NCBI GenBank assembly: GCA_035084275.1
Contig: CM068771.1
Location: 558,001 to 622,000 of the forward strand
Direction: 5' to 3'
DNA: 64,000 bases
From: Hydrolagus colliei
Lineage: Eukaryota
Below the pieces are notes generated by a model that worked only from the letters and a program-made list of their open reading frames with translations, was not told where the DNA came from and did no database searches. Position numbers and translations under genes: made by a program. Numbering within the stretch: position 1 is the first letter of the stretch; each line of letters starts with the position of its first letter. Shown in pieces: positions 1,300 to 62,218 of this stretch.

Positions 1300-2189
1300 T
1301 TAATGTCCCTGTAAGCGAGTGATGGGATAAATGAAGATGGATTTCAGTCGCTGCCTGAATTGGGTCTGAGTCACACCATAGATGACGGTGTTGGAGCAGG
1401 AGCTGAGGTACTGCAGCATGTAACCCACGTGCTCAGCGATGGTGAAAGGGCTGCTGTAGTCAAACTGCATCAGTTTGGCCTCTGTGCTCCTTGCATAACA
1501 GAAGGTGACGAAGTAGGTGAGCCACAGCAACACAAATGTCCCCGAGATGGTAAAGAGCAGGATAATGGATTTCTTTCGACTCTCCATCTCCTTGTCCGTC
1601 CCCTTCACTGATCCACGCAGATGCTGACGCACAACGCTGGCCACTAGAACATGCCTGATGGTCAGAGAGTTGAAGAGGAGGATGACGATGAAGGGAAGAA
1701 TCGGATTTACAATCATATGAATAACGTAAAACGCCTTCCAGCCAATAGCAGATCTATAGCTGGGCTTGATGCTGCAGAACCAGGGGTGTCCATTGATCAT
1801 CATCAGCGGTTGGAACATAAAATAAAAGGGGATATTTTTTGCGCTTAAAAATGCACAGATTGTCCAGATCACCAGTCCCGCTATCCTCTCAGTGCAGTAT
1901 TGGGGTTTGAGCTTTGGGCAGCAGATGGCAATGAAGCGGTCAAAGGTGAAGGCCATGGTCAGCCAGACAGAGGTTTCCATGATGACCAGGCGCAGTGGAA
2001 GGTGCACTCGGCACACGGGGGTCCGGAAAAAGGGCGAGTACGACAGGTGGAGCTGAAATGTCTTCCTCAGAATCACACCAATGAATATGACCAGCAGATC
2101 AGCAACAGCCATTGCGACCAGATAGCGGGTGACACATTTGGAGAGTCCACACTTTCCCTGAGACAGGACCACAATGGTCACCACGATTG
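1300..2189 (-). CDS. G1 exon 2: class A orphan GPCR, GPR139/GPR142-like (TM1 end to C-terminus); full gene 317 aa
   Basis: Acceptor ttccaacag ends at 2190; phase-1 join gives GFP-A-IVVTIVVLSQGKCGLS. Motifs MAVADLL, FTFDRFIAICCP, WLTY, NTVIY; intact ORF to TAA. AATAAA at 1168-1173 (-). Confidence 0.93.
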
Positions 2190-2459
2190 CTGTTGGAAAG
2201 TCACAAAAACAATCATAGATTTCACTATCTCATGCCTGATTGTGCATGTAAGGTAATATCGCTAAGCCATTGACCTGCACGCAAATCAAGCCAGCGAATT
2301 TCGCTTCCAAGTGAGCTTTGTAACCATCTTTACTCTCTGTCCATCACCCCCTTCCTCTCCGGCTTTGCTTCAGAAATGCAATGACCACAATTCCCTCTGC
2401 CTGCACTTTGGATTGTGTTATCGAGCCTCCCCTATTTGAATGCATGTGGGCTGACAATG

Positions 2460-2900
2460 TCTCAGTGATTGCTCTTCTCCGAGTCTCAGATTGAGCCTGT
2501 GGCTGCAGCACCTGATGCAACCCCTAAAAATACTTTCCCTCTCCAACTCCCTGCACTGTGTTGCTCCAACTCAATCAATGTCTCCTACCAATTTCCACAT
2601 TTTCTCACCCAACTGTTCTCACAGCAGCCCTATGTTCCCTCCTTGGAATCCTCCACTGAACTGATTTTGGCAAATGCTGCTGGTTGTCCATCATCGACTC
2701 CCATCCTCAATGTCCTACACTTTCCTCTCCGAAATCTCCACCATCCCGTTTCCTTCTGCATGCTGATCTGAACTCGTCATAATCTTGGATGACTTTAACC
2801 ACAAATCTCTGGCATTCGGTCATCCTTGACACACTAGTCCCTGTCAACTCCCACACCAATACATACTGATACATGTAACCCTGTAACTCTACTCCCTCAA
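2460..2900 (+). mobile_element. Degraded L2 LINE endonuclease fragment in the G1 intron (homologs in the G2 and G3 introns)
   Basis: Translates to an ...LVIILDDFNH-like motif; the inverted homolog lies at ~15900-16620. Confidence 0.5.
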
Positions 2901-3299
2901 ATCTCAGATGCTGTCCGAATACAGTCCCATTTCAATGCTTCCTATTCTTTCCAAATTAATGGATTGGGATGTTGTTTGCCAACTTTACCTTTCCTCTCCT
3001 AGCTTTACCCTGCAACCACTTCAATTTGGGGTTTTGTATTGTTCCTAAAATAGAGTCAGCCCTGGTCAAGCTAAATAAAATGACAATCTGTGCAACTATG
3101 ACCATGGCCTGTCTCTGTCTCAAAATTCTTCTCAATCTCTGGGCTGCTTTCCATAACATTCACCAGTCTATTCTTCTTCACTCACCACTTCTGACCAGTT
3201 TATACCTGCCTACCTGCCTGCCTACCTGCTTGCCTGCCTGCCTAATTTCATTCAACTGGTTCAACTGGTAATGAGGAGTTTGAGATACAAATAACAATA

Positions 3300-3640
3300 G
3301 CAGTAATCCTTGCATTCATCAAAATATATCAAAGTGCTTCATGTAACATATTGTAAAGTGAATTGACTGTGAACATTTTGGGAGCAAAGTCAGAAGCCAA
3401 TTGACATAGAGTTGACACATCAAAATTTGTGGATTTAGTCAACAAATGCTTAGTGTGCTGTTAGTTGTGAAGGAAAGATTATACCCAGAGAAGCGATCCA
3501 CCAATCGACCTACAACTGGGTTCTTACCTACAAAGAGAAGATTGAGAAGTGAGTAAAATTTCTCAATGGTCTGCCTTGACTGGGAATCGATCCCAGGTCC
3601 TTCACTTGTGAGGAGTGTTCTAACCAGAGAGCGACAGGAC
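3300..3640 (-). mobile_element. tRNA-derived SINE
   Basis: Minus strand tcctgtcgctctctggttagaacactcctcacaagtgaaggacctgggatcgattcc head, followed by the SINE body and tail. Confidence 0.65.
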
Positions 3641-3815
3641 TTCACAACCCGCTCCTGCATCGCTCATTCTAAATACTCCTGGTTCTTTTTCAAAAGTAAT
3701 TCAATGTGGAACGTCAGATTACCTCCATTCGCCTTAGCTTACGATCCAGGACAGTGGCAGAGTGTGTGATCTTATCAATTATGAATTATTGTTGAATCTA
3801 TCAGAGAATCTAATG

Positions 3816-3993
3816 CAACTTTTAAAAGGGAATTAGATCTTTATTTAGGGAGAACAGGTCTATTAGGCTATGGGGAGCGGGCAGGGCAGTGGGATTGAAT
3901 CACTCTTTTCAAGGAGCCGGCACAGACTAGATGGGCCGAATGGCCTCCTTTTGTGCCGTAAACGTCTATGAATCTATGAATCTATGAATCTAT
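3816..3993 (+). mobile_element. 5'-truncated CR1 3' end (~178 bp), present only in duplication copy A
   Basis: Matches the 3' end of the CR1 at 9645-10605 and ends in (CTATGAAT)n. Absent at 31861-31885; the copy offset changes from 28061 to 27883. Confidence 0.9.
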
Positions 3994-4303
3994 AAACTCC
4001 GCTGCCAAATCGCAGCTTTTGTCTATTTGCCATTCACAGTACCTTGCGGAATATACAGATATGGTTCCTGAGAGAAGGAGACCAAAATTGGATATTGCGT
4101 TTCATGGTAAAATTCTATTTGGTGATGTTCCTTTATGCTGTCATTCACTTTCGTTCCTTAACTTGAAACTTGTCGTCCTCACATTGGTGAACAGAGAAGT
4201 TTACTTTCTAGGAAAAAGAAGCACCATTTTTGGGTGCACACTTGTTTGAGTGGAGGAATGGCACACACAGCTGTACACAACTGAACCACTTTCAACAACA
4301 TAC

Positions 4304-4367
4304 CAGGAAAGCCAATGATTCCCAACGTAGGGTAAAACACCTTTTCTATTTCTATTATTCCCATCAT
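4304..4367 (-). CDS. G1 exon 1 (MMGIIEIEKVFYPTLGIIGFP + phase-1 G)
   Basis: ATG at 4367, donor G|GTATGT at 4303. The 64 nt join in frame to exon 2 (954 nt total). Same exon in G2 and G3. Confidence 0.9.
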
Positions 4368-4447
4368 TGGCAAAGCTTTTCTGTTTTCTGCTGACACTGT
4401 TCCGCAGCTGAAGAATTTGAACCTACTCCCATCTGTTCAGAACTTTC

Positions 4448-4494
4448 CTTTTTATATCTGGGAGTCAGCTCTGAAGGGACTGTCATTGCGCAAG
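4448..4494 (-). promoter_or_regulatory. G1 core promoter: C/EBP site (TTGCGCAAT), GCTGACTC AP-1/MARE-like half site, TATAAAAAG
   Basis: Motifs read directly; TATA about 80 nt upstream of the ATG; same order and spacing in G2, G3 and the orphan copy. Confidence 0.7.
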
Positions 4495-5349
4495 TGATAA
4501 ATTAGCCGATCAACCAACTGTGACAAAGCAGCTCACGCCCTTCTGCACCAAATGCATCTTTTGTGAATAGTAAGGATAATCACACAAAAAAAAAAAGTGT
4601 ATTAAAACATTTTGGTCATGACTGTGCATTCGTGAATCCCATTTTTAAAAAATTAATCAATTTCAATCAATTGAAAAGAGAAAACAGATAGAGTTGTCTG
4701 TGTATAACAACGCTTTAACTTAGGACTGGTCTCCTAATTCAGAACTGTTGATAGAACGCTGCTGTGCACGATTAGCAGCCACATATTCCCCTAACAAATA
4801 TATGGTAAAGTGACTTTACAGTGAAGTCTGTGAAGTGTTTTGGTGAATGTCACCATGATGTAGGTCCTCTGGTTTGGCTCCCACAAGTGCCTCCATAACT
4901 TGGGCGGTGACCATATTTCCCTCCTCCATGGCTCTTACTACAGAGTAGAGTCAATACAGAAGTTCAGCAAGTTGGTTGACCTCAGATGTCCTTCACATCC
5001 TGCATTCATGCCAAGACTCACTCTACATTTCACCACCTCTGCAACATTCCTTGGCTCAGCTAGTGTCTTAAAAGACAGGCTGGAATGATTTTCATACAAT
5101 AAAACCAATAACAAAATATGAGGAAAGATAATTTGCAGCCTCGATCGCTGACAGGCCTCCGCTATTGTTCCACATATAGATGGCAGATCATGCAGTACAT
5201 TGCAGCCAAAGTCTTCTCCTGCACAGGACTCCATGAACCGATTAACACTTTATTCTCACCCGATTCCACTGGCTGCCCTATAAGCAACAACAGCAAACAC
5301 AACAACCACAAAATTACATTTTTTTTGTGGAGTATCGTTCAAATAGGGA

Positions 5350-5990
5350 GGACATCCCAATGCGTTGAACATTCAGGGCTCAGGGACATGAGCGTGTGTG
5401 GGTGGTTGGGGGCAGGATTGGGATGAGGTTGGGTAGAGAGGTAGAATGCTAACTGAAGGAATGGAAGAAAAGGAGTTTCCTCAGACAGGCCTTGAAAGAG
5501 GCAAGGGATGGAGGAGAGTGAATAGATTGTTGGAATGGAGTTCCAAAGGGGCAGAAAGACTGAAAACATGTCTACCAATGATAGGGTGTGTTGGGCAGGA
5601 GACATGGAGCAGGCTTGCTAAATGGAGGGAGTATACAGATTGTTAAAGAGTGAGTAGGTCAGAGAGGCAGGAGGCGGCAAGGCCATGGAGGGACTTGGGA
5701 GTGAAGAGAAGGATCTTGAATTTGATGGGGAGCCAGTGGATCCGGGTGAGTGTTGGGGTGATCCAGTAGTGGAGAATTGTGCGGGATAGGACAAGAGTGG
5801 CTGATTTTTGGGTGAATTGCAGCTTGTGGGGGATAACATTGGGATGGCCAACAAAGAGGGAGGTGACAAATATATGCGTATGTATTTCAGCAACCTGAGA
5901 GGCGAGGCAGTGATGGAGAAGGCCGATATTCCGAAGGTGGTGGAAGATGGTGTTACACATGCCATGGATATCTTACATTCAAACAAGACA
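5350..5990 (-). mobile_element. L2 LINE 3' fragment
   Basis: ORF 5643-5960 (HITPTL..IHWLPIKFKILL..KSLHGLAASCLSDLL) is typical of the L2 ORF2 C-terminus. Confidence 0.8.
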
Positions 5991-6549
5991 CGCAGGTTCC
6001 TGAAATGTTTGTTTAGGTGGAGTGTTCATCCATGGATGCTGATGCTGTTGATGCATGTTGGGCAGAGGCACTAACACGTGCCAATCAGTTAGGCCTCGGT
6101 TTGGCTGGCACTAAGCCGTAGAAAGTTGTTTTTCTTCCAGGATGCAATGTCGTTGATGCCGACGAATATGGCAAGAGCTGGTGCAGAGGCTGGAAGGGAA
6201 ACCACTCTTTCTGGAAACAAGCATCGTTTGCCTGACAAGATGCATTCATTAAGATGGGGGAATCTATTGGAGCGTTTCTGAGGGAACTGCCGTGATATAT
6301 TCATCTTTGCAACTGAGTTAATAAGCCAATACCAACTTGCTTTCAGAGTACGATGTTGCAAATCTTCACCAGTCTGCCCCATATAATTACTCTATAACAG
6401 GGTTTTGTTTGCAAGTCCAAAAAGAACCAAATGAAAAAAACTTCCTATCTGAGTAATAGTCCAAGGCCTGCTAATGAGCTGAGTGTGACTGACTTTTCTG
6501 TCATCAGCATTGCCATATGTTACTCATTCAATACTATCATGATATTATA

Positions 6550-7350
6550 TTAGATAAATGATAAAGTGATGTTACTGGAGTGCTTTACAATTGAAAATTT
6601 CAATGGTATAGCATCGGTAAAATTGGGAGAACTTGACAGGTAGGGAGTTAGACCCTAGGTGAGGTACAGAATCGGGGAGGGCGGAAAGCAGGGACAGTAG
6701 GAGGGTGGCTGAAGGCTTGTTCGAAATGGAGGATTTACCATTGAGTTCCGTCTTGCACGTGTTAAGGGAGCTAAGTGAGCAAATGAGGCAAAGGGGACGT
6801 GTACTCTGGTATGGAGGAAGGAATGCATAAGGGCCAGCATATGAGGGCAAGATTGTGGAGAGGCAATATATGGAATTGCAGAGGCAGTTAAGCTATCCCC
6901 TCAATTTTGGATTCGAGGAAGTCCAAGGTCTCCTTGCAGTTGGTGTTGGTGGAGTAAATGAGCGAGGCAAAGCATGGTAGGTGGAGAAGCTGGTTCGTAA
7001 TGGTGTAGAGCCTGGTGTAGTTCTTGCCTCCAAGATTTTGTTGGATTTGAAGGACTATTTAGTGGAGTATGAATATTGATGATGTCTAGCCAGACCTGGC
7101 AATTGACCATTAACTTAGGTTTTTAGCCAGGTGACATGCACCTGATTGTTGAAGGAGCAATGGATGCTAGTTTTCGAAGTTGAATTCTGTGAGGAGCAAG
7201 CAGTTTGAGAGGTGCAGGCGGTATGGGCGTCGAGGATGGTGAAGAACGTTTTTGGGTGTATTAATTGAGGAGGTGATATTATTACAACAGGAAGCCCAGA
7301 TGGGCAGGTATTCAACTGACTTGAAGATATTTTCCATGGATGTTAGGGGA
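6550..7350 (-). mobile_element. Degraded L2 ORF2 (EN-RT linker)
   Basis: Minus-strand translation gives LYTITNQLLHLP...CKETLDFLESKIEG, resembling the L2 linker. Confidence 0.5.
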
Positions 7351-8129
7351 TGGATGTCGTACCCCATATGACACAATGTACTATACAATAAACCATATAA
7401 TTTAAATCTATTCTATTTTCATTTGTTCCAAGTAGTCTAAATTTCCGAGTCTCTATAAGTTACTGTATGACATCTCAAGTTGTATTCCACGTGTTTGTGG
7501 TATCAAGGCTCTCCAAGACATTGTTATTTTCCAGTTATACACAGCATTTTATTTATGAATTAGAAGAAATAACGGAAGACAGAGAGATTAGTGGAATATA
7601 CAAAATATTGCAAAATATCAATAGATAAAGCTAACATATAAATTCTTCACAAGCATTGTAATAGAAATTCCAAATGCGGATTCAAGATGATTTGTAAACA
7701 CACCACAAAACGATGGACCATCGTTTTCTTGCTGAAGCTTCCTGCTGACCGAGGGTTGCTTAGAAATTTTCCTGTTTATATTATCATTGATTCTGATCCT
7801 CAGATTACTTAATTCCTTTAATTCCCATCTATGTATCTGGCATGGCATAGATGTTTATTATTTCTGGGGCAATCCACACTTCCTCCACCATCGCTTTTTG
7901 GTATGCTTTGACTAACTCTCTAAATAGATGAGAAGAATAAATGACCAGTGTGGCAGAGAATGCGGCTGAATATGCTTTTTCTTGTGGAGGTTAGAACACC
8001 TCACAGTTTTGGGAGGTAATTAGTTGTACTAAAAACATGAATGATCTGGATTGAGTGAATGATATCTAATCTACAAAATATTTTGAGAAATGATAACGCG
8101 ACATTCCAACTCGAACAATTACTATACAA

Positions 8130-9462
8130 TGTAGTATATGCACATAGATACCAACGGCATTGGTAGAATTGGCCCCGATGAATTGAGGAGGGAGTTTGAG
8201 GAAGGAGTTTCAAGAGGTGTGGTCAAAATTAAAGTAAAAATCATCGAAACTAGTGATATTGGGACGACTACCTGTGCCATATGACAATTGGTACAGGAAC
8301 AAAGAGATTAAGGACCTGAATGCACAGTTGAAAGAGTGGTGCGGAAATCAGGGGTTTCTTTTGATGCGCCATTGGCACGAGTTTTGGAGGAAAAGGGAGC
8401 TCTTCCACAGAGATGGGCTCCATTTCAATCGGGCTGAGTCAAATGTACTAGGCAAACAAATTAATGGGGAAGTAAACAGGAATTTAAACTAGGTAAGGTT
8501 GGGGGGTGGTGGGGGAGGGAATATAACTAGGAGAAATCATAAATTAGCATTAGAAAAAGTAAAGATGACAGCGCAGGATAGCATGCCAGATAATAAGGAT
8601 ATGTTAACTAGGGGTAAAAAGCTTGGCAAAGCAAATAGGGAATCAGAGATTAGGGGAAATGGTAGGAAATTAAAAATGTTATATCTGAATGCTGCGAAGC
8701 ATTCGGAATAAAACGGATGAATTAACGGCACAATTAGACACATATGGGTACGATTTAGTAGCCATCACTAAAACATGGCTACTGGGAGATCGAGGGTGGG
8801 AGTTAAATATCCCAGGGTTTTCAGTTTATAGAATGGATAGGCAATGTGGGAAACGAGGTGAGTGGGGGTTGAGGGGCGGGTGGTAGCCCTGTTAATTAGG
8901 GATGAAATAAAAGCAGTAGAGAGGAAGGATCTGAAATTCGATAACGAGGAGGTAGAGTCAATATAGTGAAAATAAAAACAATAAGGGGTAGAAAATATTA
9001 CTGGGAGTGGTTTACAGACCCCCAAATAGTGATCACAATATAGCACAAGATTTTAATCAAGATATCAGAGGAGCATGTAGGAAAGGTAAAGCAATAATAG
9101 TGGGTGATTTCAATCTTCACATAGATCGGGAAAACCAAATTGGGAAAAGTAGGTTACAGGAAGAGTTCATTGAGTGTATGAGAGATAGGAACCAACTAGG
9201 GGACAGGCCATCCTAGACCTTGTTTTGTGAAACAGAGCTAGTCGGCAATGTAGATTTTAAATCTCCTCTAGGGCAGAGTAATCACAACATGATTGAATTT
9301 TGTATTAAGTTAGAGAGGGATATAGTTAAATCTGAGGCAACTATTTTGAATTTAAATAAGGCTAATTTTGTAGGTATAAGGAAAGATCTGGGTAAAATAG
9401 ACTGGAGTATCAGTTTAGGAGGTAGAACAGTAGACCAACAGTGGCAAATATTTAATGATGTA
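8130..9462 (+). mobile_element. CR1 LINE internal/5' part: ORF1 SGNH-esterase region plus ORF2 endonuclease, frameshifted and 3' truncated
   Basis: HIDTNGIGR, LFHRDGLHFN (ORF1); RSIRNKTDEL, VYRPPNS, IIVGDFN, SNHNMIEF (APE endonuclease). Confidence 0.9.
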
Positions 9463-9644
9463 CAGTAAAAGCCCATTTATTCATCACCCTCGGGACCTGG
9501 CCAATGCCGGTTAAAGTGTGTGCCAGATATTTAGCCGAAAACATTAAAAAATATTAGGGAATGGGGAGCCAATGGAGCTGGGCAAGAGTGGAGAGTGATG
9601 TGGTCGTGGAGCTTGTTGTGGGTGAGGACATAAACTACAGAGTT
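9463..9644 (+). mobile_element. Terminal fragment of a Tc1/mariner (pogo/Tigger-like) DNA transposon
   Basis: TA followed by CAGTAAAAGCCCATTTAT(CCGGCAC) interrupts the CR1; the cleaner copy is at 37369. No second end was found. Confidence 0.55.
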
Positions 9645-11893: not shown

Positions 11894-12010
11894 CTTTCTT
11901 CTTGTAAATAATGAATCTTCCGACTTTGACCGTGGCCACCAGCAAAACACCAGAGACAACGGCAATAATGACGGTGGTCAGACCCCCCTCGTCTCCTCCA
12001 GCTGGTCCAG
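11894..12010 (-). pseudogene. MHC class I-like remnant 1: connecting peptide/TM exon
   Basis: cacag acceptor and G|GTAAAC donor, 117 nt phase 1-1; GPAGGDEGGLTTVIIAVVSGVLLVATVKVGRFIIYKKKG. Confidence 0.8.
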
Positions 12011-12490: not shown

Positions 12491-12751
12491 TGTAGGCAGC
12501 AGTGATGGGTGTGCTCAGGCTGTTATGGTTCACCTCACAGGTGTAACTCTCAGCCTCCTCAGGGTTGATCTCCAGGGATTTGCGGAGCTGGAAGGTTCCG
12601 TCGCCATTTGATAATATCCCTGATGATTCCACGTCACCCAGAGTCCGTCCGTCTCTCAGCAGCTTCACCTCGATCGCTCGGGGTTAGAAACCAGTGGCCA
12701 AACATGAGATCTTAGACCCCTCAGAGAGGAGAGAGAGACCTTGGGGGGGCA
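12491..12751 (-). pseudogene. MHC class I-like remnant 1: alpha3 (Ig C1) exon with premature stop
   Basis: cccacag acceptor and A|GTAAGT donor, 261 nt phase 1-1. ISCLATGF*PRAIEVKLLRDG...SNGDGTFQLRKSLEINPEEAESYTCEVNHNSL; TAA at 12684-12686 replaces the Y of GFYP. Confidence 0.9.
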
Positions 12752-13330: not shown

Positions 13331-14269
13331 CCAAGCCTGTCAGCAACCTGGCCTGCTCCATGTTCCCGGGACCTACCCGCCCCACATTTGGCAGGCGAGA
13401 CTCTAGACATTCTGCCCTCAACCTCTGGAACTCCATCCCATCATCAATGGTTGTATTTCGTTATTGGTTTTGCTGTATGAGAATAATTCCTGCCCGTCCT
13501 TTCAGATAGTGGCTGAGCTAAGGAATGTTGTAGTTTTGGTGAAATGTAGATTCGGCCTTGGAATGAATGCAGGATATGAAAGACATCTGACGGCAAGAAT
13601 GTCACTGAGCTTCTGTATTGGATCTGTATCATTATCCATGGAGGAGGGAGATATTGTCACCGCCCAAGATATGGAGCTGCTTGTGGGAGCCATACCAGAC
13701 GGTCTCCGTCATATTGATATTCATCAAAACACTACACATACTCTACTGTATAGACTCTTGACTATATTTATTAAGGCAAAATCTGGTTGCCAATTGTGCA
13801 GAGCAGCGTCCTATCAACAGTTCTGAATCAGGAGACAAGTCATACGTTAAAGGATTGTGATGCACAGACAACTATTTCTGATTTCGCTCTTCAATTGATT
13901 GAAATTGATATTTTCTTTTGAATGACCTTGAATGGGATTCAAGAATGAACAGTCATGACCACTGTATTTTATCAAACATTTCAAAGCATTATCAAGCATT
14001 TCACAGTTTGGCTATGCACATAATGGATAGACAAGCATTCAGTTGCTCATTGCCTATTTACATGTGTTACCCAGCTGAATAAAACAATGGTCACAGCATT
14101 CATCCATCCTCTTTATTATATGGTGTTATCCAGAGAGAGATGGTTGGCTTCTCACACACAATTTATTATTTTATTTAATATATTATTTCTAGTCTTCCCA
14201 CAAAACCACATTTTGTTCAGAATGGTGTGATTCTCTTTGTCGCAGTTGTTTGATCGGATAATTTATTAG

Positions 14270-14315
14270 TTGCGTAATGACAGTCCCTGCAGAGCTGACT
14301 CGCAGGTATAAAAAG
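14270..14315 (+). promoter_or_regulatory. G2 core promoter: TTGCGTAAT (C/EBP), GCTGACTC, TATAAAAAG
   Basis: TATA at 14307-14315, 84 nt before the ATG; homologous to the G1 and G3 promoters. Confidence 0.7.
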
Positions 14316-14398
14316 AGGAAGCTCTGAATGGTTCTGAGAGCAGGATCACATTCTTCAGCCGCAGAACAGTGTCAGCAGAATACAGTACAGCCTTGACA

Positions 14399-14462
14399 AT
14401 GATGGAAATAATAGAAATAGAAAAGGTGTTTTACCCTACGCTGGGAATCATTGGCTTTCCTG
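14399..14462 (+). CDS. G2 exon 1 (MMEIIEIEKVFYPTLGIIGFP + G)
   Basis: ATG at 14399, donor G|GTACGT at 14463. Confidence 0.9.
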
Positions 14463-16139
14463 GTACGTTGTTGAAGGAGCTGTGTGCGCCACTGATCCAC
14501 ACTACACCCGACAATGGTGCTTCTTTTCCCAGAAAGTAAACTTCTCTGTTCACCAGTGTTAAGAGGACAAGTTTCATGTGAAGCAAAGAAAGTGAATGGC
14601 AGCATAAAAGGAACATCACCAATTAGAGTTATACTGTAAAACACAATATCCAATTCTGGTCTCCTTCTCTAAGGAACCATATATCTATATTCCAAAAGGT
14701 AGTGTGAATGGCAAATAGACAAGTAACTGTAATTTGGCAGCTGAATTCTGAGTAGACACTCTGACAGATGCAACTGTAATTCACAATGGATAAGACCACA
14801 CACTCTGCAACTCGCCTGGATGGTAAGATCAGGAGAATGGAGGTAATCTGACATTCCACATTGAATTACTTGTCAAATAGAGGCAGGAGTATTTAGAATG
14901 AGCAATACAGGAACATGCTGTGAAGTCGTGTAACTTTTTGATTAGAGCATTCCTCGCAATTCGAGGAACTGGGCTCGATGCCCATTCAAGGCAAAAGGTT
15001 GAGAAATGTTCCACTCTCCTCACACCTTTCTTTGCAACTAGGTAAGGACCCGGTTGACAGTCGATTGGTGGATCGCTTCTTGGGGTATAATCATTCCTTG
15101 AAAAATAACCAAACGCAGAGAATTTGTTCAATCAATCCACAAATTTTTATGCATCAATTCTACAGCAATTGGCTGCCGAGTTTGCCAAAAACTTATACAG
15201 GCAATTCACTTTACGATATATCATGTGAAGAACTTTAATATATGATGAATGCAATGATCACTACTATTGGCATTTGTATCTCAAACGCCTCATTACCGGG
15301 ATGAATGATCCAGTGGGAATTAATTAATTAATCAATTAATTAACGAATAATGACTTCAAGTTGTAATATGTTGGAGATCTGGAGGATAATCCATTAATTT
15401 CAATGATTTTCAACAATGATAATCTTTGCATTTGACATAGCAATTTTACTGTTTTCTAGACATCTCGAAGAAATTCACAGAATATAAACTGTAAAGTGAA
15501 TTGACTGCTTAGATGGTGGGCAAAACACGGCATCCAATTATGCATGGCAGTGTTCCACAAATTCAGGAGGATTGAGTTGACCAATTGATTCCTTTCAGGA
15601 ACATTATTTTAGGTATGTAGAGCATGGAAAATGCTGTAGATTTTGCCGTGACGTGAACCCATGTGTGCCATGTGGAAAGCTAGTTCTCTGAATTCGGAGC
15701 TGCAGGACTACTTAAGTAGAGAGAGGGCGACAGAGAGAAAGACAGGAAGATCGATATATAAGGGAGTGGAGTTGGCTACTGTACCATTGTTTCATGTGTC
15801 AGTAAGTAGTGGTGTGTGAGTTGACAGGGGCTAGAACGTCAAAAATGACTGACTGGAAGACAGTTGTGGTTAAAGTCAGACAAGTTTATGATGAGTTCAG
15901 AACAGCATGCAGAAGGAGGATGGGAGGGTGGAGCTGTCAGAGAGGAAAGTGGAGGAAATTGGGGAGGGATGAGGGAACGTTGGTGGCTGGTGAGGGACAG
16001 CCAGCAGCGCTTGCCACGATCAGTTCATTGGAGGATTCCAAGGAGGGAACTTACGATTGCTGTGAAAACAAGATGGTGAGAAGATGCGGAAGTTGGTTGG
16101 AGACATTAACTGATTTGAGCAACAAACTGTACAAGGCTT

Positions 16140-18109: not shown

Positions 18110-18139
18110 CTTTGTTGCTCTCTTTGGTCTTCACAACAG

Positions 18140-26312: not shown

Positions 26313-26313
<1 letters not shown>

Positions 26314-37922: not shown

Positions 37923-38035
37923 CTGGACCAGTGGGAGGCCTGATAACCATCTTTATCGTGATCGCTGTTGTTGGGGTTTTGATGCTCCTCGCCCTGATAG
38001 GAGGAGGAGTTCATCTTTACACTAAAAAATTTAAA
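37923..38035 (+). pseudogene. MHC class I-like remnant 2: TM exon with degenerate donor
   Basis: Same upstream intron (aaccttcctgtgttcacag) as 12011-12080; GPVGGLITIFIVIAVVGVLMLLALIGGGVHLYTKK. No GT at the expected donor and no alpha3 exon upstream. Confidence 0.75.
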
Positions 38036-46100: not shown

Positions 46101-46104
46101 TGGA

Positions 46105-48864: not shown

Positions 48865-49052
48865 GCCATGGGCGAGGTGAACTCGCTCGACAGCGACATC
48901 TTCGAGTGGTTCGCCTGCGAGGCCTTTTACTTGATCTGGTGCTGCCAGCGGCGAATCGTCTCATCGCGGGAGATCCAGACGGCGGTGGGGCTGCTGCTGG
49001 GGAGCTGGCCAGACACACCGTGTCCGAGGGTTGTCAAGAAGTCACCAGCTGA
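48865..49052 (+). pseudogene. Histone H2B-like pseudogene fragment (C-terminal half, frameshifted)
   Basis: AMGEVNSLDSDIFEWFACEA...[13 protein letters not shown], then after a frameshift GELARHTVSEG; matches the H2B histone fold (AM.IMNSFVNDIFERIA.EA...[24 protein letters not shown]). Confidence 0.85.
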
Positions 49053-49796: not shown

Positions 49797-49979
49797 GGGC
49801 AGAGGGAGTCACTGTCTGACCCAGTAACAGATGATGGGTTAGTGGACACAGCAGCTCACTGGTGGATCCCAGGCATTTGCTTGTTTCTGAACTCGTGCTA
49901 TTGATGTGTTTGTCCAGTAGTTATGTCATTGTTTATGGTATTAATGTCTGAGGCATTTAATCCCAGCCAGGGACTTCCC
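49797..49979 (+). promoter_or_regulatory. MHC-type X1-X2-Y module plus kB site, copy A (Y box mutated)
   Basis: X1 CCCAGTAACAGATG 49820-49833, 21 bp spacer, CTCACTGG, GGGACTTCCC 49970-49979. Confidence 0.65.
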
Positions 49980-51704
49980 AACTACAGCCACACTTCCCCC
50001 TCCCAAACCACTCTCCGCACCCTCTCTCTTTGAAACCTCCCCCCCACCACCTCCCCTCCTAAACCATTGCTCCCTCTTCTAAGTTACACAAACACGAATG
50101 TGGTGTTGGTTTGCAAAACGGAGGAGAGGAAATGATACTTCAACTAAACATCGTCTTGGCCAGACACATTCTGCTGGGATTGACGTGTCCAATGCAGATG
50201 CACCAGAACGGGTTTAAAGAGTTAAAATATCAGGACAGTTTGCATACACATGATCTCTATTCCCTTGACTTTAGCAGGTTGAGAGATGATCTGACTGAGG
50301 TGTTTGAAATAATAAAGGGATTTGTTAGTGTAGCTGCAGAGAAACTGTTTCCTCGGTTTGGAGAATTCCGAACAAGAAGCATTGTGTTAAAGTTAATGCC
50401 ACGCCATATAGGAGTGAAATTAGGAGATAGATATTCACCCAACAATAGGGATACACCAAGGGGTAAATGACAGGGAACAATTTAGGTAAATATTCATTAG
50501 AGAATTGGTGCTCGGAAAACTGTTAGCAGAGTAAAAACCCTGGTCCAGATGGTTTGCATCCCAGGGTCTTAAAAGTAGTAGTTTATGAGATAGTGGGGGC
50601 CTTGTGTCTGATCTTCCAAAATTCCTTGGATTCTGGAATGGGTCCTTCTCAGATTGGTGGGATGTGACTAGTGGAATGCCACAAGGATCAGTCCTTGGGC
50701 CTCAGCTATTTACCATCTACATCAACGATCTAGATAAGGACATCAAGCTTAATATATCTAAACTTGCTGATGATACGAAACTAGGAGGAAACGTTAATAC
50801 CAGGATGGCATTTAAAAAATGCAGCGCGATATAGATGGGTTAGGTGAGTGGGTAGGTAAGTGGCAGGGTATTAAGGGATATGGGGCAAGAGGAGTTAATT
50901 GGAGTTGAGGTACAGATCAGTCATAATCTCATAAAATGGCAGAACTGGCTTGAGGGGCTTACTGGCCTCCTCCACTTTCCGTGTTATTACTCCACTGCCC
51001 ATCCAACATTAAGCCTGGGACTGGTCATGTGTGTGTGAGAGAGGGAGAGTGAGTGTTTGTGCCATTTAGTGTTTGAGTGTGTGTATGATTTTGTATATGT
51101 GTGATTAGTAATCCATCCAAAAAACCCACAATAATAAAATTGCTCAATTCAATCCATGACTGTTTGTGGGACACTGCTGTGCACAATTGGCTGTTATATT
51201 TCGCCCATAAATATACAGTCAATTCACTTTACAGTATATTGAGATATCGATAAGATGTGAAAACCACTAAATCAAATGCAAGGATTAATATATTATTATA
51301 TTGTGTGTAATATTTTATATATTTTTTCAACGCTTTCAGATGTCCTTCTGACATGGAAGGCGCTAGACGAATGTAAATTTGTTGTTGTGTGAGAATATGA
51401 ATATGTGTGGGAATATATCTGTGTGTGTATGATTGTCACTATAATTTTGTTTTTTATTTAGGATCTCTCTCCTACAGGACAGATTCCTCAGTGTCTGGCT
51501 TATTAGTCCCCAAATGTTTTAATTAAAAAAAATCATGTCAGCCTTGAAATAAAACTCTAGGCCAGAGGCTCTCAATCTCTCAGACTTGTCTCCCTGGGGA
51601 GCTGTGCGCATTGACATAACTCCCTCCTTTAGGCCTATCTTACCCTCTCTCTCAGGGCAGAGGGAGGCTGTGTCAATGGTACAGTGTAGATATACAGTGG
51701 TACA

Positions 51705-51889
51705 GGGCAGAGGGAGTCACTGTCTAACCTGGTAACAGATGATGAATAATAGACACAGCAGCTCATTGGTGTATCCCAGGCCATTGCTGACTCGTATCTA
51801 AACCCGTGCTGTTGATGTGTTTGTTCTGTGTTAAATCATTGTTTATGGTATTAATGTCTGAGGCATTGACTCCCAGCCAGGGACTTCCC
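51705..51889 (+). promoter_or_regulatory. MHC-type X1-X2-Y module plus kB site, copy B
   Basis: X1 CCTGGTAACAGATG 51728-51741, 20 bp spacer, CTCATTGG 51762-51769, GGGACTTCCC 51880-51889. Confidence 0.75.
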
Positions 51890-52108
51890 AACCACATTAC
51901 CAATTCCTGTCCTTAACCAGTACTCCAATCCTGTCTCTTTCTAAAGCTCACACTGACCCTGGGTCTGTCAGTGTGCATTGAAGAATGCATTAGTGCTTGT
52001 GTGTTTTTGATAGTGTGTGTGATTGAATCTGATAATGTGTGTGAGATGGTGTGAGTGCATGTGTATATACATATATGTGTGTTTGTATGATTGAGTGTGG
52101 GTGTGTAT

Positions 52109-53901: not shown

Positions 53902-54085
53902 GGACAGAGGGAGTCACTGTCTGACCCGGTAAAAAGTGACGAGATGTAGATACAGCAGCTCATTGGTGTATCCCAGGCCATTGCTGACTCGTATCTAAAC
54001 CCGTGCTGTTGATGTGTTTGTTCTATGTTAAATCATTGTTTATGATATTAATGTCTGAGGCGTTGACTCCCAGCCGGGACTTTCC
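53902..54085 (+). promoter_or_regulatory. MHC-type S-X1-X2-Y module plus kB site, copy C
   Basis: GGACAGA 16 bp before X1 CCCGGTAAAAAGTG (53925-53938), overlapping TGACG, 20 bp spacer, CTCATTGG 53959-53966, GGGACTTTCC 54076-54085. Confidence 0.72.
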
Positions 54086-54199
54086 AAGTACATTGTCGCC
54101 TCCCCCTCCTAAACTACTGCCCTCCCCGAACTCCACTCCTGAATAACAATTTTGGACTACAGTACAGTAGTATCAAACATAATGAAACTGCACAGGAAC

Positions 54200-59190: not shown

Positions 59191-59700
59191 AGCACAAGAA
59201 CATAAGAACAACGAGCAGGAGTAGGCCATTTGGCCCCTCAAGCCTGTCCCATCATTCAATAAGATCACGGCTGATTTTCTAATCCATCTCTACCTGCCAC
59301 CTTATCCATGTATCCTTTAATCCCTTTATCCATAAGAAATCCGTCAATTTCAGCGCATCTGAGCATCTGACCGAGCATCTACAGCTTTTTTGTGGTGCAG
59401 AATCCATACATTTTTCCTCAAATCAGTGCGAAAACGCAGAGCCCCTAATCTAGTTATAGTTTCTCATTCTCCAACCAGGCGAAACAGTCTCCCACTGTCT
59501 ATTCTGTCATTCCCCTTAATAATCTTATAGATTTCTATAAAATCACCTGTAATTCTTCTAGAGAATATAGGCCTATATTTCTCGACCTATCTTCATAGCT
59601 CAACCCTCTCATCCCAGGAACCAAACTAGTGAATCTATGCTACAATTCCTCTAAGGCGAGTATGTACTTTCTTAACTAAGGAGTCCAAAACTGCACAAAA
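59190..59700 (-). mobile_element. CR1 3' fragment
   Basis: cataagaacaacgagcaggagtaggccatttggccc 3' end; degenerate RT C-terminus. Confidence 0.75.
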
Positions 59701-60329
59701 AGGGTTGGGGTGCTCTAGTATGCATGCAAGGGTGTGTGGTGTATATTGAGTTTGTGGGAGCTGTACTGAGGGGATGTGTGTATGGGGTGTATAGGTGGTT
59801 GGCGTGCTTTCCTAGGCTGAAGATTTTAAGGCTGACGTGATGTTATGGGATCTGTACTGAGGCACTAACAGGGTTTAGTGAGGCTCTCCTGGGACTGTGA
59901 GAGTGTTCTGTGTTTGTTGTGGGATGGTACTGGGGGTGTGGGTGTTGTGTGGGTGTGGTGCGCAGGCAGTATGGGGGCTGTATTGGTAATGTTTGGGGGT
60001 TATCCTTGGTCCGTACTGGGGGTGGTTCTTTTTTACCTGTTTATTTTATTTTTATGCCATTTTGTTTGGTGTGCATATAGTTTGGGGTGCGGGTGCTGCA
60101 CTAGGGGTATGAGGGTACTGTTTGTGTGGGGGTGTTTATTTAGGGATATGAGGGTGTTCTGGTATTGTTGGGGTTGAACTGCAGATGTGAAGGCTGTACT
60201 GAGGGTAAGGGGATGGTTGGAGTGTGGGCTGAATGGGGTGCGGAGTGTGTGGTGGACTGTAATTGGGATGTATTTTGTATGTTGTTTAGCAGCCTTTCAT
60301 TATTTTCACATAAACTTTGCAAAATTCAT

Positions 60330-60810
60330 ACCAACCTCCGCATCCCCAACATTCCCAGCTCCATTGGCTCCCCTTCCCCCAGAGGATTGAATTAAAAGAC
60401 GCTTGTCCTTACTTTCAAGATCCGCGTCCTCACCATGAATGCATGGTCTTGCTCCGTCCTATCTGTCTGACCTGCTGTTTCTCTATGAACCTGCCTGCCC
60501 CCTCCATTCAGCGGGTTCCTCTATGTCCCACGCCCAACTCGCCCCATCATCAGTGGACTGACTTTCAGCCTCTCTGCCCCCACACTCTGGAACACCATCC
60601 ATGATTTGTTGTCGCTTCGCCTCGCTTCTTCTCTTGCGTCTCCAAGGCTGATCTCAAGACCCTCCTCTTCAATCGTGCCTTCTGCCACCCTCCAAACTCT
60701 CCCTCCACTTCCCCCTAAACTCCCCCTTGCTCGGGTCCCAACCTGACTGTCCAGCACCTTGCAATATCCTCCCAATGTGAAAGGCGCTCTATAAATGTAA
60801 TGTTGTTGTT
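60330..60810 (+). mobile_element. L2 3' fragment
   Basis: LHWLPFPQRIELK motif; tail aaggcgctctataaatgtaatgttgttg. Confidence 0.78.
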
Positions 60811-62033
60811 GTGTTTCCATTTTCTAGCCATGTTCCTGTACCATGATCTGGGATGTGTACTGTCTGTATGTTTGGGGTGGGGTGGTTATTAACTGTTTTT
60901 GTTATGTTATTATTTCTGTTGTCCTGACATTTTTATTTTTGTGCATTTGATTTCCAACCATTTTTGGGGTACTGGAGGTGTAGGGGCCATTAAATGTTGG
61001 GAGAAATGCTGCCGCACTGGGGATGGGAGGAATATTGGATATGTGGTGATGTGAGATGCTTCACTGGGGTTATTAGAGTTATGTGGATGTATAAAGAGCA
61101 TGGGGGGTGGTTCAGGTGCTTTGTGGGTGTGTGTGTGTGGGGGGGAGTGGTGGTATAGGTGGGGGCAGGGAAGGATGCGTGAGGTGCATCTATACTGGGG
61201 CGTACTTTTTTTAAAAAAATGATTGTTCTTTTTATTTTCTCACCAGTTTTCTTGTTCCGGGGCTGTTAGGGTGTACCGGAGATATGGGGGCTGTTGATTG
61301 GTGGTTAGGGGGTGCTTAGGCTGTTGCGTACATTGGGGTGGGGGAGCTGTCAGGGTGCAGTAATTGGGGTTCTTTTTGTTTTACCACTTCTCTTTATTTT
61401 CACAAGATTTTCTATTTGTTTCATATTTTCTAGCCATTTGCTGTATGGCGGTGTGGGGGCATGCAGTGTGTGTGTATCAGGGGGGCTGTGTATGCTGTCT
61501 GCCCTGAGGGCGTGGGTGGCAGTCATAAGGTTGTGGGGTCTACACTGAGGTTTTAACTGTGTTGTGAGCTCTACTGGGACAGTGAGCATTACCCCATATT
61601 TGTGGGGCAGTAAATAGGATGTATTTTGTTGTACGGCCTTTTTTATTTTTATAGGATTTTTTTGTGTATTATCTTCTAGCCATTGTTCTGTACTGGAGTA
61701 TGTGGCATTATGTGTATCAGGCAGTAGGTCTGGGGCTGTACTTGGGTTGTTTTTGTTTCCCCGCCATTTTGTTTTATTGCCTTTTTTAATTTTCACACCA
61801 TTTGACTGCGTTTTATTTTCCAACTATTTTCCTGTACTGGGGCTCTGGGGTTGGGAATAGTGCATGTGTGTGTGTGTGTGTGGGGGGGGGGGGGTGGAGG
61901 GTGGGGGGTTTGGATGTCAGGGGTTTATTGGGGAAGTAGTCGGTATGGGGAGTTCTGGTATGTATGGGGAATATGTGTATCTACAGGTGATTACAGGTGA
62001 GGGGTGTACATAGGAGGTGGACTGTGCTATGTG

Positions 62034-62218
62034 GGGCAGAGGGAGTCACTGACTGACCAAGTAACAGATGACAGGAGGTGGACACAGCAGCTCATTGGTG
62101 TATCCCAGGCCATTGCTGACTCGTATCTAAACCCGTGCTGTTGATATGTTTGTTCTGTGTTAAATCATTGTTTATCTTATTAATGTCTGAGGCGTTTAAT
62201 CCCAGCCAGGGACTTTCC
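62034..62218 (+). promoter_or_regulatory. MHC-type X1-X2-Y module plus kB site, copy D
   Basis: X1 CCAAGTAACAGATG 62057-62070, 20 bp spacer, CTCATTGG 62091-62098, GGGACTTTCC 62209-62218. Confidence 0.75.

What the first reader, a model, noticed from the sequence alone, without database searches (positions are those of the whole stretch)
1300..62218. Candidate system: a diversifying GPR139-like receptor array interleaved with class I, class II beta, histone and SXY remnants (extended-MHC-like architecture)
Seen: three intact receptors with variable ligand-facing segments and C/EBP/AP-1-type promoters, alternating with class I remnants, followed by H2B, SXY-kB units, a leader exon and a class II beta remnant. 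Known: shark class I and II genes are linked, and the mammalian extended MHC carries receptor (OR) and histone clusters. Inference: this is an MHC-derived birth-and-death region in which the MHC genes decayed while an immune-type, possibly peptide or metabolite sensing, GPCR family stayed intact and diversified, perhaps under leftover MHC enhancers.
Basis: inference. Interest (0 to 1): 0.8.

Follow-up and report, generated by a model that had tools for sequence, protein, structure and literature searches.

The report
Young orphan-receptor gene trio, not MHC
This stretch of a chimaera-type cartilaginous-fish genome holds three intact, recently duplicated genes for an orphan cell-surface receptor whose outward-facing half changes fast. 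The supposed MHC scaffold around them shrinks to a few dead gene fragments and four copies of a short repeat.

Summary
Partly confirmed, and reinterpreted.

**Receptors.** There are three intact receptor genes, but each has two exons: a 64-nt first exon lies 2.1-2.7 kb upstream of the long ORF. They belong to an orphan class A GPCR family that NCBI names 'probable GPR139' and that is greatly expanded in cartilaginous fish. The three arose locally:
- g1 and g3 lie in a direct 9.6-kb duplication.
- g2 lies in an older inverted copy.

**How they evolve.** The cytoplasmic half is under purifying selection (dN/dS 0.13-0.24). The outward-facing half evolves near neutrality (0.9-1.2).

**Promoter.** Each gene carries its own TATA promoter, which is conserved from chimaeras to sharks.

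**MHC-like content.** This is thin:
- one class I-type C1-set exon (one stop codon, splice sites intact) plus its transmembrane exon;
- a second transmembrane-exon fragment;
- a decayed partial H2B fragment.

No alpha1/alpha2 exon, class II beta exon or leader exon was found. The 'SXY-kB units' are four copies of one ~210-bp repeat. The 'class II beta remnant' is probably the reverse-strand reading of that same repeat. The rest of the window is LINE, LTR-element and simple-repeat debris.

**Not tested.** Linkage to the MHC could not be tested. An immune role has no support here.

The parts
4304..4367 (-). g1 exon 1 (coding part): MMGIIEIEKVFYPTLGIIGFP plus 1 nt, followed by donor GTATGT
   Evidence: HMM of 52 family exon-1 peptides, E 9e-4. 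DNA and donor site read directly.
1300..2189 (-). g1 exon 2 including the stop codon. The spliced product is 317 aa.
   Evidence: 7tm_1 E 1.6e-23. Acceptor TTTCCAACAG| lies at the family-conserved phase-1 intron position.
4451..4493 (-). g1 proximal promoter block: TTGCGCAAT (4485-4493), TGACTC (4462-4467), TATAAA (4451-4456)
   Evidence: The TATA box and the GTCCC..GAG block are conserved in C. milii, S. canicula and Heptranchias loci.
14399..14462 (+). g2 exon 1 (coding part), followed by donor GTACGT
17205..18109 (+). g2 exon 2 including the stop codon. The spliced product is 322 aa.
   Evidence: 7tm_1 E 5e-24. The spliced product is predicted as a 7TM bundle plus helix 8, pLDDT 88.3.
14270..14312 (+). 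g2 proximal promoter block: TTGCGTAAT, TGACTC, TATAAA
32187..32250 (-). g3 exon 1 (coding part)
29339..30228 (-). g3 exon 2 including the stop codon. The spliced product is 317 aa.
   Evidence: 7tm_1 E 1.2e-21
32334..32376 (-). g3 proximal promoter block, same motifs as g1
1..9644 (.). Duplicon A, carrying g1. It runs off the left end of the window.
   Evidence: Self-BLAST: 1-3820 and 3986-9644 match 28040-31881 and 31867-37549 at 95.6-97.1% identity.
28040..37549 (.). Duplicon A', carrying g3. It is a direct copy of duplicon A.
13454..18144 (.). Older inverted copy of the same unit, carrying g2
   Evidence: 79-90% identity to duplicons A and A' in five blocks.
12491..12751 (-). Class I-type C1-set (alpha3-like) exon, 261 nt, phase 1-1. 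Acceptor and donor are intact. One in-frame TAA (GF*P).
   Evidence: - tblastn and PDB phmmer hits.
- Pfam C1-set E 8e-10.
- The best relatives are named class I or class I-related in 8 of the 10 best single-domain hits.
- MHC_I occurs in 23 of 52 hits, MHC_II_beta in 2.
- DNA read directly.
11894..12010 (-). Connecting-peptide, transmembrane and tail-start exon of the same class I-like pseudogene. Splice sites are intact.
37913..38035 (+). Second transmembrane-exon fragment: 43% amino-acid identity to the first, with 84% DNA identity in the adjoining intron. It has no C1 exon.
48865..49046 (+). Decayed H2B fragment covering residues 59-120, with one frameshift. The 5' part is missing.
   Evidence: tblastn E 4e-9, 55-67% identity. 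It scores below the Pfam Histone detection limit.
49797..50003 (+). The Y-like box is mutated to CACTGG.
51705..51896 (+). Copy 2 of the repeat: AACAGATG-23 nt-ATTGG, plus GGGACTTCCC
53902..54092 (+). Copy 3 of the repeat. The X-like box is mutated.
62034..62242 (+). Copy 4 of the repeat. Its kB-like GGGACTTTCC at 62209-62218 is the end coordinate of the finding. Its reverse strand reads as the 'class II beta-like' string.

Best explanation
**What it is.** The window is a transposon-rich stretch of a holocephalan-type cartilaginous-fish genome. It carries a young local cluster of three intact paralogous genes (g1, g2, g3). They belong to an orphan class A GPCR family that is hugely expanded in cartilaginous fish and that NCBI names 'probable GPR139'.

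**Gene structure (shown).**
- A proximal TATA promoter lies upstream of exon 1.
- Exon 1 encodes the short N-terminus and the first half of TM1.
- A phase-1 intron of about 2.1-2.7 kb follows.
- Exon 2 encodes the rest of the protein.

**Origin of the cluster (shown).** An older inverted duplication gave g2. A recent direct 9.6-kb segmental duplication gave g1 and g3.

**Mode of evolution (shown).** The cytoplasmic, G-protein-facing half and the promoter are held by purifying selection. The outward-facing half drifts or diversifies, with dN/dS about 1. Exon 2 diverges 2-3 times faster than its flanks, at synonymous sites too.

**Inferred.**
- The excess exon-2 divergence reflects gene conversion from other family members, or local hypermutability, on top of any selection.
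- The proteins are working Gi/Gq-type receptors with a peptide-receptor-like pocket (beta-hairpin ECL2 and the conserved Cys pair). The array serves to broaden ligand range, as in chemoreceptor-like families.

**The MHC-looking items.** These are bystanders: one class I-like pseudogene tail, a second transmembrane-exon scrap and an H2B scrap. The 'SXY-kB' and 'class II beta' signals come from four copies of a short repeat.
For: - **Family and naming.** 1155 homologs at E<=1e-10. The best 120 are all chondrichthyan and mostly named 'probable GPR139'. The top hits are C. milii at 71-72% identity.
- **Two-exon structure.** Shark loci place 22 codons plus 1 nt in exon 1, then a 4.4-7.4-kb phase-1 intron. 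The matching exon 1 was found upstream of all three window genes and of the C. milii gene. Splice sites are GT-AG and the spliced ORFs are 317, 322 and 317 aa.
- **Fold.** Seven helices plus helix 8 plus an ECL2 hairpin, pLDDT 88.3, pTM 0.85. Foldseek neighbours are peptide receptors (SSTR1, opioid, NTSR1, galanin). GPR139 has the highest identity, 24%. By sequence, GPR139 is the top PDB hit but only just (37.5 bits against 32.8 for NTSR1).
- **Duplication history.** Self-alignment. In the tree the three genes form one clade (100/100) inside a holocephalan clade with C. milii (100/100).
- **Selection.** Inner half dN/dS 0.13-0.24 (p 1e-3 to 7.5e-8 against neutrality). Outer half 0.9-1.2. The partition was taken from the predicted helices (an earlier hand-made partition gave the same pattern).
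- **Faster exon.** 57/879 differences in exon 2 against 191/8491 in the flanks (p 1e-10). Synonymous sites are 9% diverged against 2.25% (p 5e-7).
- **Promoter.** The TATA box at -85 to -92 and the upstream blocks are conserved in six loci from four species.
- **Everything else.** The Pfam survey of open pieces across the window (alignments A4, A5, A8, A9) found only 7tm_1, one C1-set, LINE endonuclease/RT and LTR-element pol domains.
Against: - There are no expression data, so transcription, the exon 1-exon 2 splice and the tissue of expression are all inferred.
- The holocephalan clade has Ile in place of the near-universal Asn1.50, and NTxxY in place of NPxxY. Altered or lost signalling cannot be excluded.
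- dN/dS of about 1 in the outer half fits relaxed constraint as well as positive selection.
- If gene conversion from functional paralogs shaped exon 2, the low inner-half dN/dS between g1 and g3 partly reflects the donors rather than current constraint on these two copies.
- The presence of a class I-like fragment and an H2B fragment in one 64-kb window is not explained, only judged weak.
Confidence: 0.8

Rival explanations
1. The region is a decayed MHC or MHC-paralogous block, and an immune-type receptor family survived and diversified in it, possibly driven by leftover MHC enhancers.
For: - A class I-type C1-set exon with intact splice sites and only one stop codon, plus its transmembrane exon.
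- A second transmembrane-exon fragment and an H2B fragment.
- X1-like and Y-like boxes with the same 23-nt spacing I recall for HLA-DRA, plus a canonical kB decamer, occur in a repeat. The composite would be expected 0.04 times by chance in the window.
- The C. milii family member sits next to a TRIM/B30.2 gene, a gene type that is often MHC-linked.
Against: - No alpha1/alpha2 exon, class II beta exon or leader exon was found.
- The motif composite is one sequence copied four times, not four independent sites. Copy 1 has lost the Y-like box and copy 3 the X-like box. No X2/CRE box is present. No MHC-type exon follows any copy.
- The receptors have their own family-wide promoter.
- The family is scattered over many chromosomes, and four other loci lack MHC pieces.
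- By my recollection, not checked here, non-classical class I genes and histone orphons also occur outside the MHC, so single fragments are not diagnostic.
- No feature ties the receptors to immune cells.
Confidence: 0.1
2. g1 and g3, or all three genes, are recently dead or never-expressed copies. Their open frames persist only because the copies are young and are patched by gene conversion.
For: - The g1-g3 duplication is recent (about 2% flank divergence).
- Whole-gene dN/dS between g1 and g3 is 0.62 and is not significantly below 1 (p 0.08).
- Excess synonymous divergence suggests conversion from other paralogs.
- Asn1.50 is lost.
Against: - Exon 1, both splice sites, the promoter block and 317-322 codons are intact in all three genes.
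- Inner-half dN/dS is 0.24 even between g1 and g3 (p 0.0012). It is 0.13-0.24 against g2 and 0.20-0.24 against C. milii.
- The Ile1.50 state is shared with C. milii genes across a dS of about 0.4, so it is old and tolerated.
Confidence: 0.1

Closest known systems
Human/vertebrate GPR139 (orphan class A receptor; solved structures 7VUG and 9M42)
   Same: It is the best sequence match among solved structures (E 1.4e-8) and has the highest identity among structural neighbours (24%). It is the source of the NCBI name. Both are class A receptors with D2.50, a DRY-type motif, the TM3-ECL2 cysteine pair and W6.48.
   Different: - Identity is only about 24%, and the score is barely above neurotensin receptor 1 (37.5 against 32.8 bits).
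- GPR139 is described in the papers listed as a highly conserved receptor expressed mainly in the habenula. This family has more than a thousand members, all of the best 120 chondrichthyan, with fast-changing outer faces.
- It is a separate family, not a GPR139 ortholog.
Birth-and-death chemoreceptor-type GPCR arrays (OR, TAAR and T2R clusters)
   Same: Both show local tandem or inverted duplicates, very large lineage-specific copy number, a conserved signalling core with a variable pocket-facing half, signs of gene conversion, and a compact promoter that travels with each copy.
   Different: This family has no sequence membership in OR, TAAR or T2R. Its genes have two coding exons rather than one. 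No expression in sensory epithelia is known. The catshark sensory atlas found no GPCR among the top 50 olfactory-enriched genes (PMC11979771).
Extended MHC of mammals (OR and histone clusters flanking class I)
   Same: Receptor genes, a class I-type fragment and a histone fragment co-occur within 64 kb.
   Different: No intact MHC gene, no class II, no antigen-processing genes and no histone cluster are present. The putative regulatory modules are repeat copies. Linkage was not tested.
MHC SXY regulatory module (S, X1, X2 and Y boxes bound by RFX, CREB and NF-Y with CIITA/NLRC5)
   Same: In 2 of the 4 repeat copies an RFX-half-site-like GTAACAGATG and ATTGG lie 23 nt apart, which is the spacing I recall for HLA-DRA (from memory, not checked). 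A kB decamer lies about 110 nt downstream of the Y-like box.
   Different: There is no X2 box and no full RFX palindrome. The module is not upstream of any MHC-type exon. The motifs are lost in the other copies at the same rate as the neighbouring bases.

Membership tests
Class A (rhodopsin-like) GPCR | 7tm_1 profile match above the curated threshold | tested here: met
   78-86 bits against a cut-off of 30.5 for all three genes.
Class A (rhodopsin-like) GPCR | Seven transmembrane helices plus helix 8 | tested here: met
   AlphaFold2 model of spliced g2: helices 2-31, 39-69, 78-111, 122-144, 170-213, 221-257 and 269-295, plus 297-321. pLDDT 88.3.
Class A (rhodopsin-like) GPCR | Conserved microswitch residues: N1.50, D2.50, DRY, C3.25-ECL2 Cys, W6.48, NPxxY | tested here: inconclusive
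   Present: D52, D105-R106-F, C81/C160, W244 and N288..Y292. Absent: N1.50 is Ile (g2 I23, whereas 90% of 50 homologs have N), and NPxxY reads NTVIY.
GPR139 orthologs | High sequence conservation with vertebrate GPR139 and a single-copy status | tested here: not met
   24% identity to 7VUG. The score is only marginally above other peptide receptors. More than 1000 paralogs exist.
Chondrichthyan 'probable GPR139' expanded family | Two coding exons with a phase-1 intron inside TM1; exon-1 motif (I/V)(F/Y)YP.L...G.P; hallmark GKCGLS, FDRF.AICC and EMESR.KS motifs | tested here: met
   The window genes sit in a holocephalan clade with 100/100 support.
MHC class I heavy-chain gene | Alpha1/alpha2 peptide-binding domains (Pfam MHC_I) | tested here: not met
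   No tblastn hit outside 12.49-12.82 kb with 156 queries; 23 of the 52 checked against Pfam carry MHC_I. No Pfam MHC_I hit in any open piece.
MHC class I heavy-chain gene | C1-set alpha3 domain followed by a transmembrane exon | tested here: met
   C1-set E 8e-10. Nearest relatives are mostly class I or class I-related. The transmembrane exon lies downstream. However, the 'IEVKLL' motif is beta2-microglobulin-like, and mammalian DR-beta scores higher than mammalian alpha3, so the class assignment is moderate.
MHC class I heavy-chain gene | Uninterrupted reading frame | tested here: not met
   TAA at the Tyr of GFYP.
MHC class II beta gene | Beta1 domain (Pfam MHC_II_beta) and a beta2 C1-set exon near 54-62 kb | tested here: not met
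   There is no Pfam hit in 128 pieces from 54.1-62.4 kb. With HLA-DRB1, tblastn gives only the 12.5-kb C1 exon and a chance string (E 6.5) inside the repeat.
SXY regulatory module | S, X1, X2 and Y boxes in fixed order and spacing upstream of an MHC-pathway gene | tested here: not met
   X1-like and Y-like boxes with 23-nt spacing occur in 2 of 4 repeat copies. No X2/CRE box is present. No downstream MHC-type exon is present. S box not assessed; protein binding is not testable here.
Extended MHC / MHC paralogous region | Linkage to intact class I/II, TAP, PSMB8-10, TAPBP or their paralogs | not testable with these tools
   None of these lies inside the window. The window's proteins are not in the contig collection, so the flanks could not be fetched.
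Replication-dependent histone H2B gene | Full-length, highly conserved ORF of about 125 aa | tested here: not met
   Only residues 59-120 are present, at 55-67% identity and with a frameshift. No Pfam Histone hit.

The most novel reading that the evidence does not exclude
The 'probable GPR139' family may be an unrecognised, chondrichthyan-specific environmental-sensing (chemosensory-type) or otherwise ligand-diversified receptor repertoire.

- It has more than a thousand members.
- Its two-exon structure and TATA promoter are conserved from chimaeras to sharks.
- Its outer face is hypervariable.

If so, it could help explain how cartilaginous fish manage with only a handful of OR, TAAR and V1R genes. 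I found no paper in the searchable library that describes this expansion.
Probability: 0.2. Interest if true: 0.7.

Novelty: new member of a known kind. Interest (0 to 1): 0.3.

Why it matters
As given, an MHC-derived immune receptor nursery would have been a striking link between antigen presentation and GPCR sensing in early jawed vertebrates. The evidence does not carry that.

What remains is useful but ordinary:
- corrected two-exon gene models, since public models of the family often miss exon 1;
- a clean example of local birth-and-death with a conserved core and a variable face;
- a family-wide promoter that can be tested directly.

The wider point worth following is the family itself. 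It is very large, cartilaginous-fish-wide and apparently undescribed. Its tissue of expression would decide whether it is a sensory, neural or immune repertoire.

Tried and rejected
1. **g1 and g3 as pseudogenes.** I first read them as N-terminally truncated pseudogenes, because a TGA lies just upstream of the ORF, there is no ATG before TM2, and TM1 seemed to have an 8-aa gap. I rejected this once shark loci showed the conserved intron inside TM1 and exon 1 was found.
2. **The C1-set exon as class II beta.** Mammalian DR-beta scored above class I alpha3. I rejected this in favour of class I-type after the search of all protein representatives and the Pfam and name checks. The assignment remains moderate.
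3. **More MHC pieces.** I ran tblastn with human H2A, H3, H4, HLA-A, DRA, DRB1 and B2M and with 156 C1-set proteins. I also ran Pfam on 515 open pieces covering 1-13.5, 18.1-28.1 and 37.5-62.4 kb. Nothing turned up beyond what is listed.
4. **Placing the window in an assembly.** Exact look-up of eight alternative protein models, plus a contig look-up, found nothing on record.
5. **The 210-bp repeat elsewhere.** It is absent from the four fetched loci and has no tRNA head or Rfam match. Its genome-wide copy number is unknown.
6. **Polarising the g1-g3 differences.** I looked for a single conversion tract. Derived states are interleaved (35 in g1, 20 in g3), so there is no clean tract.
7. **Literature on the family.** Nothing relevant was found.

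Full report
**Source of the window.**
The 64-kb window has no N runs. Its receptor ORFs find 1155 homologs at E<=1e-10. The best 120 are all from cartilaginous fish and are mostly named 'probable G-protein coupled receptor 139'. The closest, at 71-72% identity, are from the elephant shark Callorhinchus milii; elasmobranch members are about 50% identical. In a maximum-likelihood tree the three window genes form one clade (100/100) nested in a holocephalan clade with the five C. milii proteins (100/100), and that clade is sister to 91 elasmobranch sequences. None of eight alternative protein models from the window is in the public collection. The species and chromosomal position therefore could not be determined.

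**The receptors are real, intact, and have two exons.**
Three long ORFs lie at 1300-2229(-), 17021-18109(+) and 29339-30268(-), and each matches Pfam 7tm_1. Two of them have a stop codon just upstream and no ATG before TM2. In alignments all three seemed to lack part of TM1, which at first suggested truncated pseudogenes.

Shark loci resolved this. In Scyliorhinus and Heptranchias the gene spans 5-8 kb. Exon 1 has 22 codons plus 1 nt and ends G|GTAAGT. A phase-1 intron of 4.4-7.4 kb follows. Exon 2 starts inside TM1 at '(V)NL.AI.IL'.

An HMM built from 52 family exon-1 peptides then found the matching exon upstream of all three window genes, and 7 kb upstream of the C. milii gene. It reads MMGIIEIEKVFYPTLGIIGFP plus G, followed by GTATGT or GTACGT. 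The acceptor TTTCC(A/T)(A/G)CAG| sits at exactly the family position and phase.

The resulting gene models are:

| Gene | Strand | Exon 1 | Exon 2 | Product |
|---|---|---|---|---|
| g1 | - | 4367..4304 | 2189..1300 | 317 aa |
| g2 | + | 14399..14462 | 17205..18109 | 322 aa |
| g3 | - | 32250..32187 | 30228..29339 | 317 aa |

Spliced g2, aligned with 49 homologs, is predicted with pLDDT 88.3 and pTM 0.85. The model has a complete seven-helix bundle, an ECL2 beta-hairpin and helix 8.

Foldseek neighbours are peptide-type class A receptors (SSTR1, opioid, NTSR1, galanin). GPR139 ranks 42nd but has the highest identity, 24%. By sequence it is the top solved structure, though only just. The family is therefore 'GPR139-like' by name and distant similarity, not by orthology.

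One oddity: the holocephalan clade has Ile where about 90% of aligned homologs have Asn1.50.

**How the trio arose and how it evolves.**
Self-alignment shows that 1-9644 and 28040-37549 are direct copies at 95.6-97.1% identity. An older inverted copy at 13454-18144 is 79-90% identical.

I split residues into outward and inward halves using the predicted helices:
- Among the window genes and against C. milii, inward-half dN/dS is 0.13-0.24 (p 1e-3 to 2e-9 against neutrality).
- Among the three window genes, outward-half dN/dS is 0.9-1.2.
- Non-synonymous differences are enriched 3-4 fold in the outward half (Fisher p 2e-4 to 1e-7). Synonymous differences are not. A hand-made partition gave the same picture earlier.

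A ratio of about 1 does not prove positive selection.

Exon 2 of g1 and g3 is 6.5% diverged against 2.25% for 8.5 kb of flanks (p 1e-10). Synonymous sites are also 9% diverged (p 5e-7). Amino-acid selection alone cannot explain that. I infer conversion from other paralogs or local hypermutability. No single conversion tract was visible.

**Promoters.**
Upstream of each exon 1 lie, in order:
- TTGCGCAAT (g1, g3) or TTGCGTAAT (g2), 126-129 nt upstream of the ATG;
- TGACTC, 100-103 nt upstream;
- TATAAA, 89-92 nt upstream.

The TATA box at -85 to -92 and a GTCCC..GAG block are conserved in C. milii, Scyliorhinus and Heptranchias. Those species also carry a TTGC-type element at the C/EBP-like position. 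It shows that the family carries its own ancient proximal promoter with each duplicate. This argues against reliance on borrowed MHC enhancers, and it says nothing specific about immune expression.

**MHC-like content.**
tblastn with human H2A, H2B, H3, H4, HLA-A, DRA, DRB1 and B2M found two real things.

The first is a C1-set exon at 12491-12751(-). It is 261 nt and phase 1-1, with an intact acceptor and donor and a single TAA at the Tyr of 'GFYP'. A 117-nt connecting-peptide/transmembrane exon follows at 11894-12010(-), with intact splice sites.
- Against mammalian structures the C1 domain scores best with DR-beta and beta2-microglobulin.
- Against all protein representatives its best single-domain relatives are class I or class I-related chains from sawshark, coelacanth, frog, gar and turtle.
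- Among 52 short hits, 23 carry Pfam MHC_I and 2 carry MHC_II_beta.
- I call it class I-type with moderate confidence.
- No alpha1/alpha2 sequence exists anywhere in the window. Upstream of the exon, the inverted receptor duplicon begins at 13454.
- A second transmembrane exon at 37913-38035(+) is 43% identical, and the adjoining intron DNA is 84% identical. It lies in inverted orientation next to the end of duplicon A', and no C1 exon accompanies it.

The second is an H2B fragment at 48865-49046(+). It covers residues 59-120, is 55-67% identical to human H2B and has a frameshift. It scores too low for Pfam Histone.

**The 'SXY-kB units', the 'leader exon' and the 'class II beta remnant'.**
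kB-type decamers (GGGACTTYCC) occur at 49970, 51880, 54076 and 62209. The last one ends exactly at the finding's end coordinate. All four lie in copies of one ~210-bp repeat, at 49797-50003, 51705-51896, 53902-54092 and 62034-62242. Each copy is 90-95% identical to the consensus, and the flanks are unrelated.

The repeat also contains GTAACAGATG, then 23 nt, then ATTGG. This resembles the X1 and Y boxes with the spacing I recall for HLA-DRA (from memory, not checked). The composite is rare by chance (0.04 expected). However, it is one sequence copied, not four independent sites. It is intact in only two copies: the Y-like box is lost in copy 1 and the X-like box in copy 3. There is no X2 box and no full RFX palindrome. 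No MHC-type exon follows any copy.

The only class II beta-like string (MSCCVYYSSSVTRLDSD against DRB1 residues 27-43, E 6.5) is the reverse-strand translation of the same repeat, and it recurs in the other copies.

Pfam found nothing relevant in 128 open pieces from 54.1-62.4 kb, and only RVT_1 in 126 pieces from 37.5-54.1 kb. A leader exon cannot be shown or excluded from sequence alone, and nothing supports one.

**The rest of the window.**
- LINE endonuclease and reverse-transcriptase pieces lie at about 9.7-11.1 kb.
- Pol-domain pieces of an LTR retroelement lie within 18.1-28.1 kb.
- An inverted repeat pair lies at 44216-45357 and 46132-47240. One arm has an ORF whose CxxC..YIGET..R..EH pattern I recognise from memory as Penelope-like; Pfam gave no hit.
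- CA-rich and CT-rich tandem repeats are frequent.
- A weak tRNA-Val-like element lies at 63009-63078.

**Does the family associate with the MHC elsewhere?**
- Among the top 120 hits the family occupies at least 17 different contigs in Heterodontus francisci and 15 in Heptranchias perlo.
- Four fetched loci (C. milii, S. canicula and two from Heptranchias; about 100 kb in total) contain no C1-set, MHC or histone matches.
- The C. milii gene has a TRIM/B30.2 neighbour. This is suggestive at most.

**Verdict.**
- Solid: the receptor array and its diversification.
- Real but minimal: the class I-type and H2B pieces.
- Misread: the SXY, kB and class II beta items, which come from a short repeat.
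- Unsupported: an immune role.
- Untested: linkage to the MHC.

I found no paper describing the family's expansion in cartilaginous fish. One paper confirms that the catshark has very small OR, TAAR and V1R repertoires (PMC11979771). That is why the family itself, rather than this locus, is the lead worth following.

Noticed in passing
window 4451-4493(-), 14270-14312(+), 32334-32376(-); L001:2853-3015; L002 and L003:9838-10000: The proximal promoter is conserved across the whole family. TATAAA lies 85-92 nt upstream of the ATG, preceded by a GTCCC..GAG block and a TTGC-type element. This holds from holocephalans to sharks.
   Followed up: partly
L001:3016-3079 and L001:10001-10927 (C. milii, MU249860.1): The public 308-aa model of the C. 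milii homolog starts at an intronic ATG and misses exon 1, which lies 7 kb upstream. Many family models from other species have odd N-termini joined just before 'NL.AIVIL', which suggests widespread mis-annotation of exon 1.
   Followed up: partly
g2 residue 23 (window 17207-17209); the same position in g1, g3 and C. milii P0001: The holocephalan clade has Ile at the near-universal Asn1.50 position of class A GPCRs, and NTVIY in place of NPxxY.
   Followed up: no
window 1300-2189 against 29339-30228: Exon 2 of the two youngest copies is about three times more diverged than 8.5 kb of surrounding duplicon, at synonymous sites as well. This may reflect gene conversion from unseen paralogs or a mutational hot spot. 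No clean conversion tract was found.
   Followed up: partly
window 18100-28100 (+): There are decayed pol-domain pieces of an LTR retroelement: protease, RT, RNase H, integrase zinc-binding and integrase core Pfam hits on separate open pieces.
   Followed up: no
window 44216-45357 and 46132-47240: An inverted pair is 86% identical. One arm carries a 274-aa ORF with a GIY-YIG-like 'YIGET..R..EH' pattern and an adjacent RT-like ORF. I recognise it from memory as Penelope-like; Pfam gave no hit.
   Followed up: no
window 63009-63078 (-): A tRNA-Val(TAC)-like element scores only 42 bits in Rfam. It is more likely a SINE head or a tRNA pseudogene than a working tRNA gene.
   Followed up: no
window 1-13500 (exact piece not located): One open piece gave a weak Pfam hit to the Daxx N-terminal domain (E 0.0014). 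About 0.2 such hits are expected by chance among 141 pieces. It is not among the acidic-repeat pieces that I re-tested. I mention it because DAXX is MHC-linked in mammals.
   Followed up: partly
L003 and L004 (Heptranchias perlo CM068656.1, 12.87 and 13.0 Mb): Two loci about 120 kb apart encode the identical 325-aa family protein. Very recent duplication of family members therefore also occurs in sharks.
   Followed up: no
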